A stretch of DNA of 64,000 bases from Aplysia californica (lineage: Eukaryota), in contig NW_004797417.1 of assembly GCF_000002075.1 (NCBI RefSeq), positions 1,180,048 through 1,244,047 on the forward strand. The letters run 5' to 3'. Within the stretch, counting starts at the first letter, position 1. Each line of letters opens with the position of its first letter. Positions 749-13,883 of the stretch are shown here, one piece after another. The notes under the pieces were generated by a model. The model was not told where the DNA came from, ran no database searches, and saw nothing but the letters and a program-made list of their open reading frames with translations. Position numbers and translations under genes: made by a program.

Positions 749-1195
749 CCATAAGCCAGTGTGCATGAATGTGAGTTAGGATGAATATTTATGAATAATA
801 GTCATCAGTGTAAGCTTGTGTGTATGTGTGAGTGTTTGAAAATGTGTGTGAATTTCCTCCTTTCAGTCTCTGTCCGACTACCTCTTAGTCTCACAATCCC
901 ATGCAGCTTCCTGCCAGAAGGACCCTTTAAGAATCTGAGGCAACTTGAATATCACAACATAGTGCTCAGCACGATGGAACCATGGAGTTCAGTATCCCAA
1001 ATTTGATATAGTAATACAGGTATCACTGAAATAAAGTAAGACTTCTACAAACTAATTGGACTGAAGCCCATAAGGAAAAGAGTCTACATTTAATATTTCT
1101 CAAAAGCTGGCAATCTATGAAAAAAATGAAAACCTATTGGCAAGAATAATGCCTCAGGGAATTTATTTTTTTTCTATACAATAGAAACCACTTAC

Positions 1196-4100
1196 GTCAG
1201 ATCAAGCACTTTGAGTGTTGTGTTCACCGGTAGAGCTTTCTGTAAAGCCATAGCACCCTCCAGACCAAATCCATTCCAACTCAAATCTAGAACCTCCAAA
1301 GTGACATTGTACTGAAAAAGAAGAAAATGGGAAAATTTGAAGGAAAAAGAAAATTCATTTACAAAGACAATCTGTGATGAGATTAAATCTTAAATTATTT
1401 ATCCTTGTGTACAAAAGTGGAAATTGGTTGGAGAGAAATGAAAGCTGCAAGACATCGCACAGTGGAACTTCCCAATATTGATGAAAATAAGTTTGCTGGG
1501 GGGGGGGTGATTGTTTTGGGGGGGTTTTTGTTGGGAAGTTTTGTTTGTTTGTTTGGTTTTTTTGGTTCTTTTTTGTCTTAACATTTTTTTTACCTAGCAC
1601 TGCCAGGGAGGGGAGTTGGATGACTCTATCAATATCAGGGGATAAAATGCTTTCCACTTAAAACTTTATTTTTATGATAAAAAGGTGGTCTGAATGACCC
1701 TTTGCTTTGAAGGCAGATAAAAGATATAAATGGAAATCTGACAAATACCATTGTGTTTGGTAGAGTATTAGTTCATAACAAAAAAAAAACATTTTTCAAT
1801 TTATGAAACTCTAATGAAGCTTTTATAAAACAATAAAAAACGCCAATGCAAAACTATGACCTAGAGCTGACCAGTTTACAAATGTACATGAGAGGGGGCT
1901 AGTTTTCAGATTTAAGATCAGCAGGATTGACCTCAGATTGATTTGTTCTAGCAACAGATCATTACCCTTAAACAGTTTACGATGGCAGCAGCTCCTTGTT
2001 TCCGTAGGCAGTTCCAGCTCAGGTCAAGATCAACAATACCTTCATTGACTGACTGCAAAACAAGGAAATCAAGACTCTGCTATTATTACGACAAAAAGAA
2101 ATCAACATCAGGTACAAAGACTGAATAAATATTTCTTCTGCAGTTACGAAACTATAGATATTATCTTAAATCAGTTCAATGTGAGAGAGAAAAGTAACAA
2201 AAATCATATGCCAGTAGCCAGTGTTAAGAAAAAAAGTCTTTAAAAAATAGAAACTCTGTAAAGGAAATAGTATGTATTTGAACACAGAGCAATGAGCCAA
2301 ATAAGTGTTTCAGATAAAGTTGCAAGCTTGAGGTATGGCTACATATCTGTCTTAAAATAGAGAGATAATTTTAAAGCAGCAAACTTCAATTTAATTCCTC
2401 CTCCAAAAGAATCACAGAAACTTCAATGTAGGAACTTTGTTACAACACTATAATGATAGTGCTTTACATCATACCATTGCAGCCATATGGTCAAAAAGAG
2501 CAAAGACAACCACAATGGAGAAGTGCAAAGCTATACAGGATACAATAAGAAGCATTTGAGCTCATGACAGAATGCTCAGACCACAGCAAAATATTACAGG
2601 AAGGAAAAGCAACGTTTAAAAAATATCAAATTAAAATCTTGAAACTCTGTAAAATAATCAAACATCAGCCCTGGTATGATAATTCCAAAACATTAAAAGG
2701 ACAAAAAAGTACAAAATCCCCAACCATCATCTTTCCCATCTTTTCTCCCCCCGTGATGTAAATCATTTGTTTTAACTGTTTAAACTGCTCAAATGCTACT
2801 GCATCGCTAACAACAACAACAACAACAACTATTTAAGCCCTGAGTTTTTTCCACCGTTTCCGGGATTTTTTTCTGTACAGTCACCTAAACCAAGTGCACT
2901 ATGTCTCATTATAACCCCAAAAGCTTGCCTTCAACTTCTAAATGGCAGAAACAAAAGGCATAGTCATTACTTTAAAAAACTTGGTTCAGGAATAGTTCCG
3001 AAAAACAAAGACTAAATAAAACGAAACAGTTGTCACTACTATCAGACGCTGGAGCGTCCAATGGGGAACAGGGTTATTACCGGCAGACGCTCCCAGCGCC
3101 AGAAAGGGTTTAAAGAGTTAATCACCGAACTTTTGCAATGGTTGCAGTTGCCTCTATAATGGTTGAACCTTTCTTTTTACCCAATCGATGTTTCAAGTCC
3201 TCCTCAGGAAAAAAAACAGCAAAGGCCAAAGCCAAAGGAATGAAGGTGTACTAAAAGCTCACCAAAGCACCACCTAAATGGATCCCTCCCATGACTGAGA
3301 ACTCATTGTGGCTCAGATCAAAGCTCATCAAGGACATATTGTTCTTCAAAGGGTTTATAAAATGGTAGGCATCTGTATCTGAAAGCTGATTTCCTGAAAA
3401 TCAAAATCAAAACAACTGTGAATCAAAATATGACCTTTTAAGTTGAAAATATGTTTATCAGAATAAAAAAGAGAATAAGATTGCACTGGAATGCTAAGCA
3501 CAATTTTTAATTTCTCTTTAATGCATAAACCTCGATTTGCAACCCAAATCCCAACCCTTGCTAAAACAGAAGCTGTGAACACAAATCTCTGTATTTGCTG
3601 AAAATGGTGAAAAACAGGTTTCTCTCCAGACCAGTGGTCATGTGTTTCTCCAACAATAAAATAGTACAAACTATTTGGTTCATCCCCCCCCCCCCCCCCC
3701 CAACTTATTCAACCCTTCAGTTCCCATTCAACCGCTTGAAGCTTTCTTTTTTCCACATTCTGTTCACCAGGAGCCTGTGACTAATTTTTTTTAATGCCTG
3801 TCATTACATCTCAGGGGTTGTGTTACCGAGAAATCTGAATCCTCCCCCTGCTCCTTTTTTGGTAGATTTCACACTCCCATCTACTTATTGGCTGGAATAT
3901 CAGCAGGCACTTTGAACACCCCAACTTCCCCTCCCCCTCCTTCCAGCCCTTTTCTCTTTACTGACTTTATGAAAGAAAAGTACAAGCAGCTTTGATAATC
4001 ATATAATAATATTTATTCTTTACCCCATTCTTGCGCTGTGATCAGATTAAATCTATATAATAAGGCATATACTTACATTAGGAAAACTGGTTGTATATTT

Positions 4101-7100
4101 CAATTTTTTTTTTAAAGAAGACAGTGATAAACTAGTGTCTCACTTTTGCACATTTCTTTTTTGATTACACTTTCATCACTAATACTGTGTTAGCACTGAA
4201 TTCAAATCATAAGGCATGTTAATAACAGAGGCATCAAAAGTACATAATGTACTGCAGATAAAAAAAAGGTACCACTTTGTGAATAAAATCTAGTTTTTGA
4301 GTCTTTACAGTTTTTCTCACATGTGAGCAATTCTGAGCACTCTAAAAAGTATATCATGTTATAAAAATAATATTTTGGTGCTCACTTTGGGCTTACCATC
4401 CCAACAAGTAGAAAAATGGCATTTTTCTCCCAACCATGAGGCCGATTTTTCTATTCTTTGTTGGGTTTTTTAAATGAAGTTTAGGTCAGCGTTTACCAAA
4501 AGCCGCAATAACATCTGATCATTGTCACCCATGAAAGATAGCAGGTTTAACTGAACATCAGAGAAATTGAGCCATTGCATGCTCTGCTGGTTTTTGCTTT
4601 TTCCAAGACATTCAACGTCTGTTTTTTTATTGATGTTAAATGTCCTGGCAACAGCAGAAACAAAAACACAATAGTTATAAAACCAAAATGTACTGTATAT
4701 TTAAATCCTAACAAAACAAATGCCCACTGAAGTTTGAAATGTCAATTAAAAAATAAAAAAAATATTTAAAAAACTGAAAAAATTCAAGGAAAATAATCCA
4801 TGACATATCATTACAGTGGTGATCACTTTACCCATTATTTCCCTTTGACCAGATCCAGAAATATTCTAGTCTTGCAACATAGTTCATAACACTTTTTTCA
4901 GCTCAAAACATACCAAAAAACATCAACACCTAACAGTTCATGGATTTTTGCCAATTTTCTCACATAAAGAGGGTGGTCATAGAAAAAAAAAAACCCACTC
5001 TATGCTGAAGCACCATACTAGGTAAATTTGCTGACATTTATCGCATCCAAAGATGATTGAACTCTTTGCCTAATTTTAAATAGAAAAAATTGTTGAAAGT
5101 CCAGAGAATAATAGCCCTTATCTTACTAAAAATGTAGAATCAGACACCAACATCATTCAAAAACAATCATAACAATCCATTGCACATCTCTGGAACTGAC
5201 CGGCAAGGGAAAGCATTTTGAGGGTTGTGTTGACTTCAAGCATTTCAGCAATAGCCTCAGCACCAAGAGACCCAATAACATTGTTGGACAAAGTCTGAAA
5301 CAGTGAGAACATGACAGTGATAGCACAGCACTGTGAATAAACAAAGCATACAGTAAAGGATATGGTTCTAACAAGAAATTAAATTTTCTCATTATTTATG
5401 AGCAGAACTCACTTTCAAAATGTATTATTCAAAAATAGTTTTCTTTTATTTTTTATTCAAAATTTGTTGGCCTTTTTTATAGTATATTGCAGAGTATATA
5501 AAGATAACAATTTGATGCCCTTTAGATATCAGACATGAAGTTAATGAAAAAGAAAGACATATTTTCAATATATCTCAGAGGCCCTAAATCTATCAAAGGG
5601 TATTCAAATTCTCAACTCCCACAAAAGTATCATGGGAATAACCACACTACGAAAAGAAAATAACTCACCAGTGACGTAATGAAATGGTTTTCTTTCAGCA
5701 TATTTGCAATATAACATGTACCAGAACTCTCAATGTAGTTATCACCTAGGTCCAGGTTTTCTGTTACAGTGTTGTGCTGAAAACAGAGAAAAGGACATTT
5801 TCTTCCTTTTTGTTCTATTAAATACAAATGAAAACATACTGTTCCTCCACATTTCTATTATATCTTCTAAGTATTTCTATTTGGTATTTCAGACAGGATT
5901 TTTTTTCAACAAACTGTTTCATATCAAGGTCATGGCAATAAAATGTATGAACCATTGCTAAAAACAATTTTTTAATCTATGTGTGTTTGGAGGGGGGGGC
6001 ACAAATATAACAGTTTCATCATGCTGTAGATGACAGAACAATACTTTGCACCACAGTAAAGTAACCATGACAAATAAATACATCGATAACTTTGATAAAG
6101 AAGAGGAATTGATAATGCAGTATTGAATAAAGTGATGAAGATGACAAAGTCATGATGAAAAATAAATTGAAGCCATGATTATCAAAAGCTGGAAGAAAGA
6201 TTAGGATTTTAAAAATCTACAAGCAATAAAGAAATCAGAGGAAAGAGGAAAGAATAAACAGAATAACCAGTTGCCCCCTCCCATCACCTAGTAAAAAAAC
6301 TGCAAACAAAAGACATTACAAGACCTTACTGAGAAGGACGAGAAATATATATCAAAGCTACACTATAAAAAGTATACCTTAAATGCCAGAGCAAGGGGTT
6401 TTGTCGCTGTTCCTCCAAGATATCTGTGCCTCATTCTCACATTACGCTCCCCAATGTGACGGCACAGATATGACACTGGTATAAATCCTACAACATTTAT
6501 AAAAAATCATCAGCTTTGAAGATACTACAAGAATTTTGTTTTCATGAAATAAAGGAATATTTCATCTCGATAAATCTGTATGTCTGAATCAGTCTTCTTA
6601 TCTCAGATAGTCCTCATTTTTTTAGACAATCTCTCTATTTCAGGCAAGCTTTATATCTCTATAATTCTCTTCATAACCATACAACTTTCCCATTTAATGT
6701 CTGCAAAAGAACTTGGGAGCTCGACTGATTGGCAAATTTAGACGTGGTAAATACTCATGTCTCTCTTTTAAATTCCATTGAAGAGATGAGGGGGGGGGGG
6801 GGGGGGGTAAATATTTCAGAATGTTTAATGAACACAGTATCACTCCTTGTCCTTATATACACCGCCAAAAGTCCAACTCACTACCTCTGAACAGCAAAGT
6901 GCCAGTATCTAAATAAAAAGAGGACTAATTTAGAGGCCAATAACTTTGTCCTCTTTGGACCAACTTCAACAAAACTTGAAACAAATTATATTTAACCAAA
7001 GGAAAATCAAGTTTATCAATATGAAGAAAGTCATTATATTTGAGAATTATCAGGGTTATTTTTATTTCAACTATCCAACAATTAAACAATCTCAAACCAT

Positions 7101-10100
7101 GGTCTAACGAAAAAGAGTACAAAATTTAAGGAAGAAGTTGGACCTTATAACAGCCTCAATTCTGAGAACTGTTAAGAATCTATTTATCAACTGATTCACT
7201 GAGATCCTTTGATTTTCCAACTCTATTTCACCCATCAAAATAACATGTGGCACGACATTGTGGAATCAGGCACTCGCCAATTTTGGGGAAAATAGGGATA
7301 TTGGTGTCATCTGAAAGCCTGTTCATTTGGTGAAAAATATATCCATCTATGTTGATTAGAAGTCGAGATATTTGCAATTGAAGGAGGGGAGGGTTGCCTG
7401 GTTTCAGAGGTAAAATTAAGGAGAAAATGGCCGCCAAAGTTTGGAAACTTCCATAGCTTGACAGTCTTTGGAAACTGAAAATTTTAATTTTTTGTGCCTT
7501 TAATTCATGTTTTTCTTTTAAAAATCCCACACAGCGCCGAATCAGCGGTCGTTTAGTTTCGCCAGGGCGTGACCGGGGTCAGCTGCCGGTCAGTCTACCT
7601 GCGCTCACTCCACGCGCGGAGTTACATACCACAGCAATTTTACACAGTTTTGTTTCAACGCTCACGAATGAAAGCAGGGTTATCAATATACACATAGTGT
7701 TCCATCTTTGAGTTTCTTCTTTCAATGTACAGTTTGTGAAAACGCAACGAAGATATCTAGTATAGTTTTTTAACTGCATGTGATCAAATACAGCCGTTTT
7801 ATATGTGGTAATCAAGGAAATATGCACCGAATTAAAAGTTATGTAACTACCAAAGTGCGGGAATAAATTCACTAAAACTCGCTCAGAATAAAGACAATTA
7901 ATGTGGGTATCTACTTACCAAAGGACACCGTTGTTGGAAGATTAGTAATCCACATTTTTGTCTTTTCGTTCAACAGCCAAATTCGTAGGGGCTTGTGATG
8001 AAATTCTCATTACAGTATCCTTCATTAAATTCATGACACAGATCTCTTTACACAGCTTATCTATGGCGCCCTGGTTGTTTTCTCGGTGCCTGCAATGAAG
8101 ATGCTCTCTGGAGCAAATTAATGTGCGTTCATAACGTATCGTAGTTTTTCCGTATTGTTTACGATGCCTTGAACCCACTTTTCAATTTTTAAAATAGACT
8201 GGTGTCAGCTTTCGGTTCCTTTTCTCCCAGCGGGCCCAAGCCAAAGCCATGTTGTGTAATGGATGGAATGCAGTGTTGTTCTAAATTGCGCTGTTTGGGG
8301 ATTTACTTTTTTGGAAAATGTTTTCTGTACAGCTTCATGTACGTGTCTATTGCTGTCTGAATTCCTGGAATAGAGGTTTTCTGAATAGGTGCAATGTGTG
8401 AGTTGTCATTATGAATTTGACTGTATTACTATGCTTGGTTGAGAGAGTCGAAAATCAAACCTATAGTGTGCGCTTTGTCAACAATGATTGGATGATAAAA
8501 TATCCCTTGGCAGTGACTCATATTATTAAGTCCGAGCCTTTCTTATCAGCCTCTGTTGTACTTTAGTCACGTTCTTATTAAACGCGACAAAGTTCATTCA
8601 GAGAGGAGGAACGGGAAAGTCTCCCGTGTGTGTGTTCCATACGGAGATTTCAGTAAACCTGTTAGAAATGAATCACGGGCAAATGGATTCTACCTCATAT
8701 CGTAACACGGCTCAATCAACGAAGATGAAATTTATACACATTAAGCACAAATATATCTGCCTTTCATAGAAACAACAAACTATGAAATTAACGGAGAAGT
8801 GTTGAACTTAAAACAGCATAGAATCCAGAATACGCAATTGCACGGGTCAATTAAAAAGGCACTGGATGAGAATCAGATGTAAGCGACTTAATATTGCAAG
8901 AACTATTCTTCAAACAATGATGAAAATTATACACGTACAGCACAAATATGTCATCAGTGCATGCACCAAAATTTGTTGAGATTGAGCGAGCACTTTGGAA
9001 ATTAAAAGTGAATTAAGTGCAGCACACACAGATTAAATTATATGAAAATCAGAACATTTTGCACACTCTGTAGCATAGGCACATATCGTCGCATTGAGAT
9101 CGGGTTTTCGCAGACTGAGAGGGGGAATCTTGCTCTTTTCTTATTGTATGGAATAATTCGTGGTTAGAGTGAGGATACTGCCGATAATTAGTGTCAAAAG
9201 TGTCGATTACGCCATGACCTGCCCGCCTGTAGCTGATGCGCAACGGAGCGGCCAGAGACCCCCGCGTAACCCGGCACGGAGCGGTTCCGACGGTGATTTA
9301 ATGACTTCCAGATATGTCGCTGGCCTGGGAAACTAAGAGGCACGATTTCGGCCTGTTTTCGGCGCTGTGCCCACAGAAATGTGTTTTTTAAATAGAAATA
9401 ATAGGTCTGGAGCCAAAAAAAAAGAGAGTTAAATAGGCCTAAAAATTGTCCAGAGGCAGGAAAAATGACGGTTTCTTTGATTGTATTATTTTGACGAGCA
9501 CCTGATTCCATCACGATGCCTCACATATGTTTGCAATGTCATCTGTTCATTACCCATGCAATTGAAAGCTGAAAGGCAGGTTCTACCTTGAAAGTATTAT
9601 TTTGAAAGGGAACACAAGCATATTATTGTGTGCCACCATCATGGAGCACTGACACTATTGGCACTTTGGTATTGGTTTATAAGTGAAAAAAAAAAAGTAG
9701 GCTTACATTACAAAACTTTTTATTTATCTATCTATTTTACAACAATTCTCTGCATACAAAAATTTGATAAGCTTCTGCTGGTTACCACTTTCAATGAGCT
9801 GAACATCCAAAACAGGTATGTAGCTTCAAAGAGTCAATAATTAAAATAGATGTACTCAAAGCATTCAGTTCATAATAAATAAAGACACATTGGGTTTGGG
9901 ATTGTGCCTCCAACAATGAAATCGATCAAATGAAGAAGTGATAGCTTGCCATGGGAGGCTTATTACCGGGTTTTACTCTTACAAGTCATAAAGCCCTGCT
10001 TTGTTGCAACAAGCTTAGTTTAAGATAAATGTAAACATTAGCATTTATACAATTTAAAAAATAGGTTTCAAGCTACTAGCATGTACATACTACACCGACT

Positions 10101-12850
10101 AAATTTTAAGGAAAGATTGAGGATTTGATATATGAGGACACAATTGTAGAATGCACTTGTAGATACTTTTGATTAATGATTAAAAAGCAGAAAGAAACAA
10201 CAACAATGCAGCATCTAGCTAGTAGACGAACTGGGAGGTTTAAGACTTCACAAAGTTAGCACTGTGTCCATGTAGGTATGAGGAGAGAATAGCATAAGAT
10301 TTTTCTTAGAAAGGATCTTAAGTTGTCATAACTCTGATCCAAAATTAGATTGAAGAACCTACAGTCCATTACCCTTGATTTTTCGTAGGGCAATAGAAAA
10401 GAAAAAATCGAAAAAATTTGATTATAAAATTATTATAATTGTACCATGTCTCCGACACTGCTCCTCATACTCAAGTCTCCCTGTGGCATCCAGCTGTGTG
10501 CTCATAGGAGCTGAAAAATATTCAAAATAAATAGATCTAGTAAGTTAAATTCCTGAAGTGATACACTTAGATTAGTATCTAGATGCAAATTTTTTTTAAA
10601 AACATAACAGCATACAATATTGTTCCAATTTTGTGATTGCTATTCACTTCTGCACTTATCTACAAGATTTAATTAACATCAATGCTTCCATTAAGTCTTT
10701 TAAGATCTAATTCATATGGTGTTTGGGTAATAATAACCAGTTGTGGGCCCGATCTATCGGAAACGTCCTGAAAGGGTTTAAAAGTAGAATTCAGAAAATT
10801 TCTTTTAAAACAGAAATCTATGTTCTATGCATAAAATAATGCTTCAATTTCATGCAAGTAATAACCACATGTTTACAATTCTTAAAGAACACACACAAAC
10901 ATTTAGTGACAAGTGTGGTGAAGAAATAAGACTCTTTTGCAACAAAATATAGAAGACATGATTTCCATTCCCAGTGAAGGGAAGTTACCTTATTCAGTAT
11001 CTCTGCCTGTCAGCTGAGATGCTGTATCCCATTTAATCCTGGAAGGCCCTGACAGGCAGGGTCCAAGCAGCCTACCTCCTACAGAATCTAGATTGTGCCA
11101 ATATGGGGTTTAACCCTTTGAGTCCTGACCTCTTGAGGGTACCATGCCTCTCTACCTGAGCTCCTGGGCGATTCATGCGTATATTACCCACATTCATATC
11201 ATTGTCAGAATCACATTCCATAACCCACTCAGGGCAGTCTCCATCATTACCAACATATAATTCAGAAAGACTTTGATATTAATAAATAATGTCTTGCCAA
11301 GCAAACTGTTTTACGCACATGTTTTGTACCAAACTAGGTTGGGGATGTAATCTCTCTCTACAGGGTACTGATGGCTATGCATAAGGACAATTTTATGCAC
11401 AAGAGGTGTACCGATGGTTAGTACTCAAAGGGTTAAGCATTTGCAATTATTTGCAATCAAAACTATATACTCTTGCACCACACACATTTTTTTTTTTTTT
11501 TTAAAGAGCGTCTATCACCTTTGAGTATGAAAGTGTTTAAGTGCATCAAGTTGTGAGCATTGTATTACTTCAAGAAGTTGGAGGGAGCCACGCATCTAAC
11601 ATAATACGTTGACAGTGAAAGATTCTAAATTTAAAAACATTTCACAATAACAAAGACAAAAATACCATTTATTATGGCAGCAATTTTAATATTTTGTTGT
11701 GCACAAAAATCTTTTTCAAACACAAGCGGATATACCACAAAGTATTTCTGGTTGCCGTTTAAGAAAAGAAAATATTATAGACAGATACTCACTCTCAGAA
11801 AGTTCATCCTCAACATCAGTATCAAACTCTTCACTAGAATGAGGAGATCCAGACAGCCAGGTCTCAAAGGACGGGTGTCTGTTTCTTGCTGATTCAGTAG
11901 ACAATGGAGTAAGTTCCGCAGATTCTAGCGCCACTGCTTGAAAAATGGAATATCAATTTAAGATTTATTGCATTATCCTGGTGAACAAAATTTGTCTTTT
12001 TAAAAACATGACTTGAAAACATANNNNNNNNNNNNNNNNNNNNNNNNNNNNNNNNNNNNNNNNNNNNNNNNNNNNNNNNNNNNNNNNNNNNNNNNNNNNN
12101 NNNNNNNNNNNNNNNNNNNNNNNNNNNNNNNNNNNNNNNNNNNNNNNNNNNNNNNNNNNNNNNNNNNNNNNNNNNNNNNNNNNNNNNNNNNNNNNNNNNN
12201 NNNNNNNNNNNNNNNNNNNNNNNNNNNNNNNNNNNNNNNNNNNNNNNNNNNNNNNNNAGAGGCATTAACAGCAATTAGATGGGTGACTGAATGTTTCTTT
12301 TATGCAAGGCACCACCTTCAGTTCACACAGACATTTATTGCTCTGGCCAACAACGACCTAGTATGATGATGTGAAAAAAATTAGAATTCTAAGAAGGGAA
12401 GTTTACTTCCCACCACAAAAAAAAAATCACGGAAATAAAAGTAAAAACACAGGCATAGATCACAAGAGCAGGAAAATCAGGCTATGAGAGGAAAACTCAA
12501 TTCAGTAACTTACCACAGTCAATTTCTGTTTTATTATTCTCTTCCACGATATCAATCAGCTCTGAATCTTCTGGCACATCCTCAATAGGAGTCAAATCAA
12601 AAGGGGAATCAACTTGAGAAGCAAAATCTGACTCTGATGATCTTCCTGTAGCATGTAAATGGGACTTTTGCAAGCTGTGTCGAGCAATGGCCTTCTTATG
12701 ACCATTGACATCACCTCTGCCACGGGCAACGGAGGCTGTGACAGGCCGAGAGTCACCAGATTTGGAGGCAGATGGCCGGGATTTCTTCGGAGCAGCAGTC
12801 AGAGGCCTTAGATGCCTCTGCATCTTTATAGACAGTCTTTCTTTTTCCAT
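1196..12850 (-). CDS. LRRC74-like (RI-type leucine-rich repeat) protein, spliced, 3' end beyond the window
   Basis: Phase-consistent GT-AG exons: 12850-12514 (MEKERL...), 11936-11793, 10510-10445 (RLEYEEQCRRHG), 6487-6378 (FIPVSYLCRHIGERNVRMRHRYLGG), 5776-5669 (NLDLGDNYI), 5294-5201 (LSNNVIGSLGAEAIAEMLEVNTTL), 3393-3263 (FDLSHNEF), 2052-1966 (LDLSWNCL), 1311-1196 (LDLSWNGFGLEGAMAL). 28-aa LRR periodicity; the N-cap resembles LRRC74A/B. Probable non-coding exon 1 ends at 16744. Confidence 0.85.
7530..9369 (-). mobile_element. Internally deleted Chapaev/Transib (RAG1-related)-type DNA transposon
   Basis: TIR CACAGCGCCGAA at both ends; 4-bp TSD CCCA (7526-7529 and 9370-9373); contains a decayed transposase C-terminus on the - strand. 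Confidence 0.8.
8050..8495 (-). pseudogene. Decayed Chapaev/Transib/RAG1-like DDE transposase, C-terminal catalytic part
   Basis: Manual translation: ...IQTAIDTYMKLYRKHFPKK*IPKQRNLEQHCIPSITQHGFGLGPLGE, then a 1-nt frameshift, then GTES*HQSILKIEKWVQGIVNNTEKLRYVMNAH. The (H)x4H...GxGxxGE(Q)GxE layout parallels RAG1 HKTLAH...GAWASEGNE. Several stop codons. Confidence 0.7.
11114..11432. mobile_element. piggyBac-type MITE
   Basis: TTAA-CCCTTTGAGTCCTGACC...GGTTAGTACTCAAAGGG-TTAA: 17-bp TIR with 2 mismatches and a TTAA TSD. Confidence 0.85.
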
Positions 12851-13883
12851 GATGATGCTTTTAACCGTAGTCTCTTGACCTAAGGTTTCTGAAAAGAAGA
12901 ACAATTATGGGCAGTGTAATGGCCTATAGCCTGCCTATTCATGATAGGTCTCCGTCACATAATATGAAACTAAATAAAAACAGAAACTATTGAAATAAAC
13001 GCAGGTGCCCCTGGGGTGGTGTCCTATTCCCAGTTTTATACACCACACCAAAGACTTAATAAGCCTGAACACACAAATGCAGTCAAACTTTGTTATACCG
13101 CCTACCTTGGAATGAGCATGAAGTTGGCTAGTGGTGTAATGAGGTTCTAAAAGTGTCTCAATAGCCTCGCTACCCGACATCAAGGGAAACAATTCTGCTG
13201 TATGATCTTAAAGTGTCTTTTTGCTGGCTATGTATTTAGAGCTAAGAGTTGGAGCGAACGTGTAAGCCCTACCCACCCAGCGAGTGATGATAGTTTAGGG
13301 GGAGAGCTCTGGTGTGAGTGCGAAGTTCAGGGAAAACAAACGTGTCGGTCAGTTCACACCCCGATGTGATCCCGTCTGGGGCAAACATTGTATCGCTTCA
13401 TCGAGTTTTACAACGTGTATGTGATCACATTCACGATAGTGGCTGATCTTCGATGCGACAGAGAGTCTATTGATCTCAACTTTTCACTCTTGGTTGATCG
13501 GCTGTCCCGCCCGGGTTTTTGTTCCGCAAATTAAGATCTGAAATGCGGGATCTTAGTCGAATGTAGACCTTCAGAGTGAATCAGAGCAGGATTTTAGGGG
13601 TGACTTTTGTATAGTAAAAATTCTGTTTTCTTAAAACAGCGGGATGTAAAGCGAACCGGGATCGTAAGCGGTGGGATCTTAGGCGGAGACTACTGTATAT
13701 CAAATGAAAGTATGTCCATTTTCCAGTTCATGTTGAAAGTTTCAGAGGTTTCTGACACACACAAAAAAGTTTTTGTAACTTTGAAATAAGTCACTCAAAT
13801 ACAGGTAAAAAAGCACATACACCACACCACTGGATAAGAACTCTATAAAAAATATTTACACTATGTACAGTTCACAACCCCAG

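What the first reader, a model, noticed from the sequence alone, without database searches (positions are those of the whole stretch)
7530..9369. RAG1/Transib/Chapaev-type transposon with RSS-like asymmetric bipartite ends (16/26 spacers)
Seen: both ends begin CACAGCG, one mismatch from the V(D)J heptamer CACAGTG. Both have a second shared box, TTAGTTTC(G)CCAGG, lying 16 bp from the heptamer at one end (7553) and 26 bp at the other (9336). The 10-bp difference is about one helical turn, like the 11-bp difference in the 12/23 rule. The TSD is 4 bp (CCCA). Inside is a decayed transposase C-terminus with an (H->R)x4H pair and a GE(Q)GTE motif 21 residues later; in mouse RAG1, H942 and E962 are 20 apart. 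Established: CAC termini with 4-bp TSDs typify Chapaev, whereas Transib/ProtoRAG make 5-bp TSDs, and RAG1-related mobile elements are known in molluscs. Inference: this family may use a 12/23-like paired-end recognition rule, an invertebrate parallel of RSS asymmetry. The ORF track does not show it because of stops and a frameshift.
Basis: partly seen in the sequence, partly recalled or inferred. Interest (0 to 1): 0.85.

Follow-up and report, generated by a model that had tools for sequence, protein, structure and literature searches.

The report
Chapaev transposon with RSS-like unequal ends
This is a gutted copy of a known jumping gene (Chapaev, a cousin of the antibody-gene enzyme RAG1) whose inner end signal sits one DNA turn further in at one end than at the other, a layout kept in 14 related families from sea slug to amphioxus and much like the 12/23 signals that RAG1 reads.

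Summary
Window 7530-9369 is a 1.84-kb non-autonomous Chapaev DNA transposon with a 4-bp TSD. It lacks codons ~47-791 of a 937-aa transposase that survives intact in 4.1-kb copies in this genome. Within the family the 16/26 spacing is trivially fixed, because the spacers are inherited.

The real test was across families. In 14 families with transposases 25-56% identical (this genome, Amphiura, Branchiostoma, unidentified metagenome hosts), ends called without using the box carry TTAG(N)T at offset 32-35 at the 5' end and 22-24 at the 3' end. The difference is always 9-11 bp, and the spacer sequences are ~31-36% alike. Only CAC is invariant, so this family's closeness to CACAGTG is partly luck.

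The predicted transposase folds like the RAG1 core, with an NBD-like segment (weak match) and no RAG2. A 12/23-like pairing rule is inferred, not shown. Such asymmetry is published for Transib and RAGL; I found no report for Chapaev, but could not read Repbase or the N-RAG-TP paper. This scan noted the same layout before on other copies in this genome.

The parts
7526..7529 (+). Left target-site duplication CCCA
7530..7541 (+). 3' (short) end: 12-bp terminal inverted repeat beginning CAC
   Evidence: (I21)
7553..7558 (+). Inner TTAGTT box of the short end, offset 23 from the terminus (16 after the heptamer)
7570..7592 (.). Subterminal TGACC/GGTCA motifs; enriched near both ends in most related families (46 seen vs ~6 expected)
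8064..8497 (-). Decayed C-terminal transposase remnant (parent aa 792-937: H-x4-H, GEQGTE with E881/E885); stops and a frameshift
   Evidence: tblastn, 82% identity E 4e-39 and 54% E 3e-15
8495..8497 (.). Deletion junction (parent positions 861/3096; ~2.23 kb lost), shared by 14 of 15 aligned 1.85-kb copies (L009 rejoins at 3105)
8496..8640 (-). N-terminal transposase remnant (parent aa 1-46, start of the Chapa zinc finger)
9331..9336 (-). Inner TTAGTT box of the long end, offset 33 from the terminus (26 after the heptamer)
9358..9369 (-). 5' (long) end, upstream of the transposase: 12-bp terminal inverted repeat beginning CAC
9370..9373 (+). Right target-site duplication CCCA

Best explanation
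Shown: a non-autonomous deletion derivative of a Chapaev cut-and-paste transposon, copied in trans as a 1.85-kb subfamily; its ends are bipartite (CAC terminus plus inner TTAG(N)T box), and the box lies one helical turn further in at the 5' end, throughout this Chapaev clade. Inferred mechanism: the single DDE transposase (D480, D551, E885) acts as a RAG1-like dimer. The catalytic core reads and cuts at the CAC terminus; an NBD-like helical dimer (aa ~305-366) binds the inner box on both ends. Boxes one turn apart stay on the same helix face, and the NBD-like dimer tilts to take one long and one short end, as in the 12/23 synaptic complex. This favours pairing a 5' end with a 3' end, without any RAG2. 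Integration with a 4-bp stagger gives the TSD.
For: Parent: 4105-bp element, one 937-aa ORF, three copies 98.5-99.3% alike; empty site shows a 4-bp overlap (joint 996-5106). Ends: 14 families, offsets 32-35 / 22-24, difference 9-11, mean 10.07, long end always 5'. In the 13 families there is exactly one TTAGNT in the first 60 nt of each end; best shared 4-mer in 13/13, at most 5 in 2000 shuffles. Spacer identity between families 31-36%; transposase identity 25-56%. Box variants co-vary between the two ends of a family (TTAGCT in L055, TTAGGT in L056). In several families the 5' end is the 3' end plus one 9-11-nt block. All 46 inward-facing end pairs I counted are long+short, including a 272-bp element. 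A natural 10-bp-shortened 5' end is found at one locus only. Fold: Foldseek RAG1 E 5e-16, VIA Z 26.8 (model 313-931 vs RAG1 405-1008); segment 270-420 ranks RAG1/Transib chains first and aligns aa 305-366 to RAG1 NBD 393-456 (Z 4.1). RAG NBD enforces 12/23 by pivoting (PMC10462144).
Against: No binding or cleavage data. The NBD match alone is weak (Z 4.1, rmsd 3.8, Foldseek E>0.05), and the GRPR motif is reduced to x-PRK. The box is T-rich TTAG(N)T, unlike the A-rich nonamer on the same strand. The families share one ancestor, so the shuffle test shows conservation, not independent origins; long+short pairing among copies is expected from inheritance alone. RAG1 alone reportedly shows no 12/23 preference without RAG2 (as stated in PMC8355894), and in BbeRAGL the NBD-like domain is minor (PMC10462144, PMC8289069). 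Two loci (L057, L061) gave only one candidate end each. An earlier scan note (s1-716534) mentions 14 vs 7-nt spacers in another copy; I could not check it.
Confidence: 0.55

Rival explanations
1. The box is a true transposase site, but each end is read independently and tolerates n or n+1 helical turns. The asymmetry is an ancestral one-turn insertion that is permitted but not required.
For: Helical phasing alone explains differences of 9-11 bp. Several 5' ends look like the 3' end plus a ~10-nt block, and in two families the block looks like a local duplication of GCCGAAA. Symmetric and asymmetric families coexist in Transib (PMC1131882).
Against: No symmetric or reversed family among 14 whose spacers have diverged almost to background; the one natural long-to-short variant did not spread (a single event).
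Confidence: 0.28
2. The asymmetry serves something other than synapsis: TTAGTT resembles an arthropod-type initiator (own knowledge), or box and TGACC motifs bind host factors, and the longer 5' spacing suits the transposase promoter or autoregulation.
For: The long end is always upstream of the ORF; TGACC/GGTCA motifs are enriched at both ends; runs guessed to be RNA cover the whole element.
Against: The same box stands at the 3' end at a fixed distance from the cut site; non-autonomous families down to 272 bp keep both boxes; an initiator has no reason to be tied to the terminus within 1-2 bp.
Confidence: 0.12
3. The layout is a neutral relic of common descent or of recent horizontal spread.
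For: Chapaev elements are known to transfer horizontally (PMC4079192).
Against: TTAG is invariant and the spacing is held while neighbouring columns carry almost no information, and proteins are down to 25% identity.
Confidence: 0.05

Closest known systems
Chapaev superfamily (CMC group; 4-bp-TSD Chapaev, not Chapaev3); Repbase holds Aplysia members such as Chapaev-3_ACa; N-RAG-TP of Aplysia
   Same: CAC...GTG ends, 4-bp TSD, N-terminal Chapa zinc finger, C(2)C, LH and H(4)H motifs, single DDE transposase (PMC4079192, PMC4411706, 10.64898/2026.01.24.700457).
   Different: Nothing tested differs. The bipartite, one-turn-asymmetric ends are not described in the papers I could search. I could not compare with Repbase entries or read Panchin and Moroz 2008, so this family may be catalogued already.
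RAG1 and the 12/23 RSS
   Same: Core fold, N-terminal zinc domain (profile hit to 21WB, E 2e-7), CAC terminus, inner box over the same positions as the nonamer (24-29 and 34-39, 1-based, vs 20-28 and 31-39), difference of about one turn.
   Different: No RAG2, no RING in this family, 13-14% identity, box TTAG(N)T rather than ACAAAAACC, no full GRPR, 4-bp TSD, mobile.
Transib
   Same: Single transposase of RAG1-like fold (Foldseek E 7e-9; VIA Z 17.8); some families have 12/23-like ends (PMC1131882).
   Different: Transib lacks the Chapa domain, makes mostly 5-bp TSDs, has CACAATG and an A-rich nonamer, and most families are symmetric; here all 14 families are asymmetric.
RAGL transposons (ProtoRAG 27/31; PflRAGL-A)
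   Same: Bipartite TIRs; PflRAGL-A has a 10-bp spacer asymmetry (PMC10462144); ProtoRAG prefers the 5'/3' pair (PMC8289069).
   Different: RAGL carries a convergent RAG2L gene and 5-bp TSDs (PMC7204232); neither is present here.

Membership tests
Chapaev | Invariant 5'-CAC ... GTG-3' termini | tested here: met
   28/28 ends
Chapaev | 3-4-bp TSD (4 for Chapaev proper, TWA for Chapaev3) | tested here: met
   13 of 18 two-ended copies with perfect, varied 4-bp TSD; empty site for the parent
Chapaev | N-terminal Chapa zinc-finger domain (H-x7-C-R-x-C-G, C-x2-C, W..C-x2-C) | tested here: met
   motifs at aa 8-20, 66-69, 99-114; profile hit to RAG1 N-terminal domain 21wb_A E 2e-7
Chapaev | DDE core with C(2)C, LH and H(4)H motifs | tested here: met
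   D480, D551, C570-C573, L637-H638, H859-H864, E885 invariant or nearly so in 77 homologues
Chapaev | Phylogenetic grouping with Repbase Chapaev transposases | not testable with these tools
   Repbase sequences not available; tree holds only the families found here
Transib | 5-bp TSD, CACAATG heptamer and A-rich nonamer | tested here: not met
   4-bp TSD, no 5-bp match in any of 14 families
Transib | No N-terminal Chapa/NZD domain | tested here: not met
   domain present
RAGL / ProtoRAG | Convergent RAG2-like gene | tested here: not met
   single long ORF in the 4105-bp parent
RAG/RSS 12/23 system (works-like) | Two conserved blocks separated by a variable spacer, lengths differing by one turn | tested here: met
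RAG/RSS 12/23 system (works-like) | Nonamer-binding domain with GRPR motif | tested here: inconclusive
   three-helix segment at the right place, aligned to 3gnb at Z 4.1; only PRK kept
RAG/RSS 12/23 system (works-like) | Efficient cleavage only of a long/short pair | not testable with these tools
   needs biochemistry; genomic pairs are all long+short but inheritance explains that

The most novel reading that the evidence does not exclude
Chapaev transposases enforce a true 12/23-like paired-end rule with a single protein and an NBD-like dimer, and this geometry was already present in the common ancestor of Chapaev, Transib and RAG1, before RAG2 was acquired.
Probability: 0.35. Interest if true: 0.85.

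Novelty: new variant of a known kind. Interest (0 to 1): 0.62.

Why it matters
The origin of the 12/23 rule is debated (Transib seed, PMC8355894, versus RAGL-A, PMC10462144). A third, more distant RAG1-related lineage in which every resolved family keeps one-turn asymmetry would push the geometry back to a common ancestor, or show that it evolved twice on the same protein scaffold. Near-identical intact transposase copies with defined ends make it a one-protein system in which asymmetric end recognition without RAG2 can be tested directly. The window copy itself is an ordinary dead element.

Tried and rejected
Within-family fixed spacing as evidence: rejected, since the spacer sequence is inherited too. 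Heptamer identity to CACAGTG as a family trait: rejected. The long box TTAGTTTC(G)CCAGG: family-specific; only TTAG(N)T is shared. Single-sequence phmmer against PDB found nothing; the profile of aa 270-420 hit only designed repeat proteins. Empty-site pattern for the window copy gave four 2-mismatch matches, inconclusive. L044's ends were found by scanning for the box and lack a TSD, so I left them out of the counts. L057 and L061 gave one candidate end each (offsets 24 at 3' and 32 at 5'), unresolved; P0058 had no contig. Panchin and Moroz 2008 and one RAG review are not held. Contigs cannot show start sites, so the initiator idea stayed untested. Reading the box as a 9-mer that starts 3 nt before TTAG gives spacers of 22-25 and 12-14; that register is my own post hoc choice, not a result. 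No N lies inside the element; none was filled.

Full report
Observation. The element runs 7530-9369 with a perfect 12-bp TIR and a CCCA duplication. The transposase remnant lies on the minus strand, so the long end is the 5' end. The element is inserted in an abundant host repeat. The genome has 927,310,431 bases in 4,332 contigs; from memory this is the size of the Aplysia californica assembly, and the named homologues are largely gastropod, but no tool named it.

The family. The genome search gave 58 matches, 16 of them near full length. 13 of 18 two-ended copies have perfect and varied 4-bp TSDs. Copies differ from their consensus by 2.3-7.7%, the window copy by 2.3%. All 55 exact ends have the box at offset 23 or 33. 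A protein search found three copies with 906-941-codon open frames. The C880 copy is 4105 bp with the same ends and one 937-aa ORF, with no second gene; the three are 98.5-99.3% alike. The window copy matches parent positions 1-861 and 3096-4105 at 85-89%, and 14 of 15 aligned 1.85-kb copies share this junction. So one deletion derivative was amplified in trans. Public runs show the parent's empty site with a 4-letter overlap, and three runs guessed to be RNA cover the whole element; expression is suggested, not shown.

The protein. It has the Chapa motifs at the N-terminus, with a profile hit to the RAG1 N-terminal zinc domain (E 2e-7). The core has near-invariant D480, D551, C570/C573, L637-H638, H859, E881 and E885 among 77 homologues. 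The AlphaFold model (pLDDT 85.8) matches the RAG1 core best (Foldseek E 5e-16; VIA Z 26.8), then BbRAG1L, Transib and P element. A separate model of aa 270-420 (pLDDT 92) again ranks RAG1 and Transib chains first. The DDBD-like half matches well (Z 5.7-7.3, rmsd ~2). The three helices before it align to the RAG1 nonamer-binding domain in register (aa 305-366 vs 393-456) but weakly (Z 4.1). A conserved PRK stands where RAG1 has GRPR, with a conserved TGGQP upstream. By termini, TSD, Chapa domain and core motifs this is a Chapaev element (criteria from PMC4079192 and PMC4411706); it fails the tests for Transib and RAGL.

The test that matters. Copies of one family share their spacer sequence, so they say nothing about a rule. 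I therefore called the ends of divergent relatives from CAC/GTG, a TSD and inverted-repeat identity alone, and then looked for the box. Five families in this genome, seven from metagenome assemblies of unnamed hosts, one in the brittle star Amphiura filiformis and one in Branchiostoma lanceolatum resolved. All 14 have TTAG at offset 32-35 at the 5' end and 22-24 at the 3' end; the difference is 9, 10 or 11, mean 10.07, and the long end is always upstream of the ORF. For the 13 tested there is exactly one TTAGNT in the first 60 nt of each end, and no shuffle out of 2000 exceeded 5 of 13. Spacers are 31-36% alike between families and transposases 25-56%. The variable fifth base of the box changes at both ends together in two families. 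Genome-wide patterns give 778 matches against 183 controls and 189 against 13, with two length peaks, and all 46 inward-facing pairs I counted are long plus short. A 5' end shortened by 10 bp exists at one locus only. The families share an ancestor, so this shows long-term conservation of box, spacing and polarity, which implies selection; it does not show which step is selected.

Mechanism. Shown: bipartite ends, one-turn asymmetry, RAG1-like fold, 4-bp TSD. Inferred: the core cuts at CAC; an NBD-like dimer binds both boxes and tilts to take one long and one short end, as the RAG1 NBD does (PMC10462144). The invariant TTAGNT occupies positions 24-29 and 34-39, overlapping the nonamer positions of 12RSS and 23RSS, although its sequence differs. 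I give this 0.55. The main rival (0.28) is that each end tolerates n or n+1 turns and no pairing rule exists. A promoter or host-factor role (0.12) and neutrality (0.05) fit worse.

Novelty. The element kind is known, and Aplysia Chapaev families are in Repbase (named in 10.64898/2026.01.24.700457 and PMC4079192). Asymmetric bipartite ends are published for some Transib families (PMC1131882), ProtoRAG (PMC8289069) and RAGL-A (PMC10462144). Searches for Chapaev with asymmetric termini, or with heptamer and RAG1, found no description, but Repbase Reports and the N-RAG-TP paper could not be read. Earlier notes of this scan report the same layout on other copies in this genome; I reached the reading before consulting them and do not count them as support.

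Verdict. Observation confirmed; interpretation partly supported. An ordinary dead copy that points to a real, clade-wide and apparently undescribed RSS-like geometry in a RAG2-less transposon with testable intact copies. Interest 0.62.

Noticed in passing
window 13884-15326 (-): Intact 480-aa piggyBac-like transposase ORF (Pfam DDE_Tnp_1_7, E 1.8e-61) with a C-terminal cysteine cluster; no clear TIR pair found in 12500-16500.
   Followed up: partly
window ~7234-7529 and from 9374 on: The element sits inside an abundant host repeat (7316 candidates, ~81-84% identity); a 20-bp inverted pair lies at 7261-7280 / 9491-9510.
   Followed up: partly
ends of most families, nt 40-160 from the terminus: TGACC/GGTCA motifs, often as a TGACCnnnGGTCA palindrome, 46 seen vs ~6 expected; absent in L056, L059, L060. 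They resemble nuclear-receptor half-sites (own knowledge); binding partner unknown.
   Followed up: partly
G000:C3:342615 and 345818: Two copies of a family-B 5' end that lost 10 bp between GAAATC repeats and now has the short spacing; found nowhere else.
   Followed up: partly
G000:C7:1588895-1589166: A 272-bp miniature element that keeps one long and one short end.
   Followed up: no
L057:7918-7947 (-): Candidate 3' end of a RING-bearing Chapaev that begins with a perfect CACAGTG and has the box at offset 24; partner end not found.
   Followed up: partly
L051 and L055, L056, L058: The heptamers differ between the two ends of one element while box and spacing are kept.
   Followed up: no
P0009, P0010, P0029, P0039, P0045, P0076: Plakobranchus homologues of this transposase; five are annotated 'amine oxidase' in public databases, apparently in error.
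   Followed up: no
L031 aa 124-245 of the transposase: Long Ser/Thr/Pro-rich disordered linker between the Chapa domain and the core, where RAG1 and some Chapaev have a RING finger.
   Followed up: no
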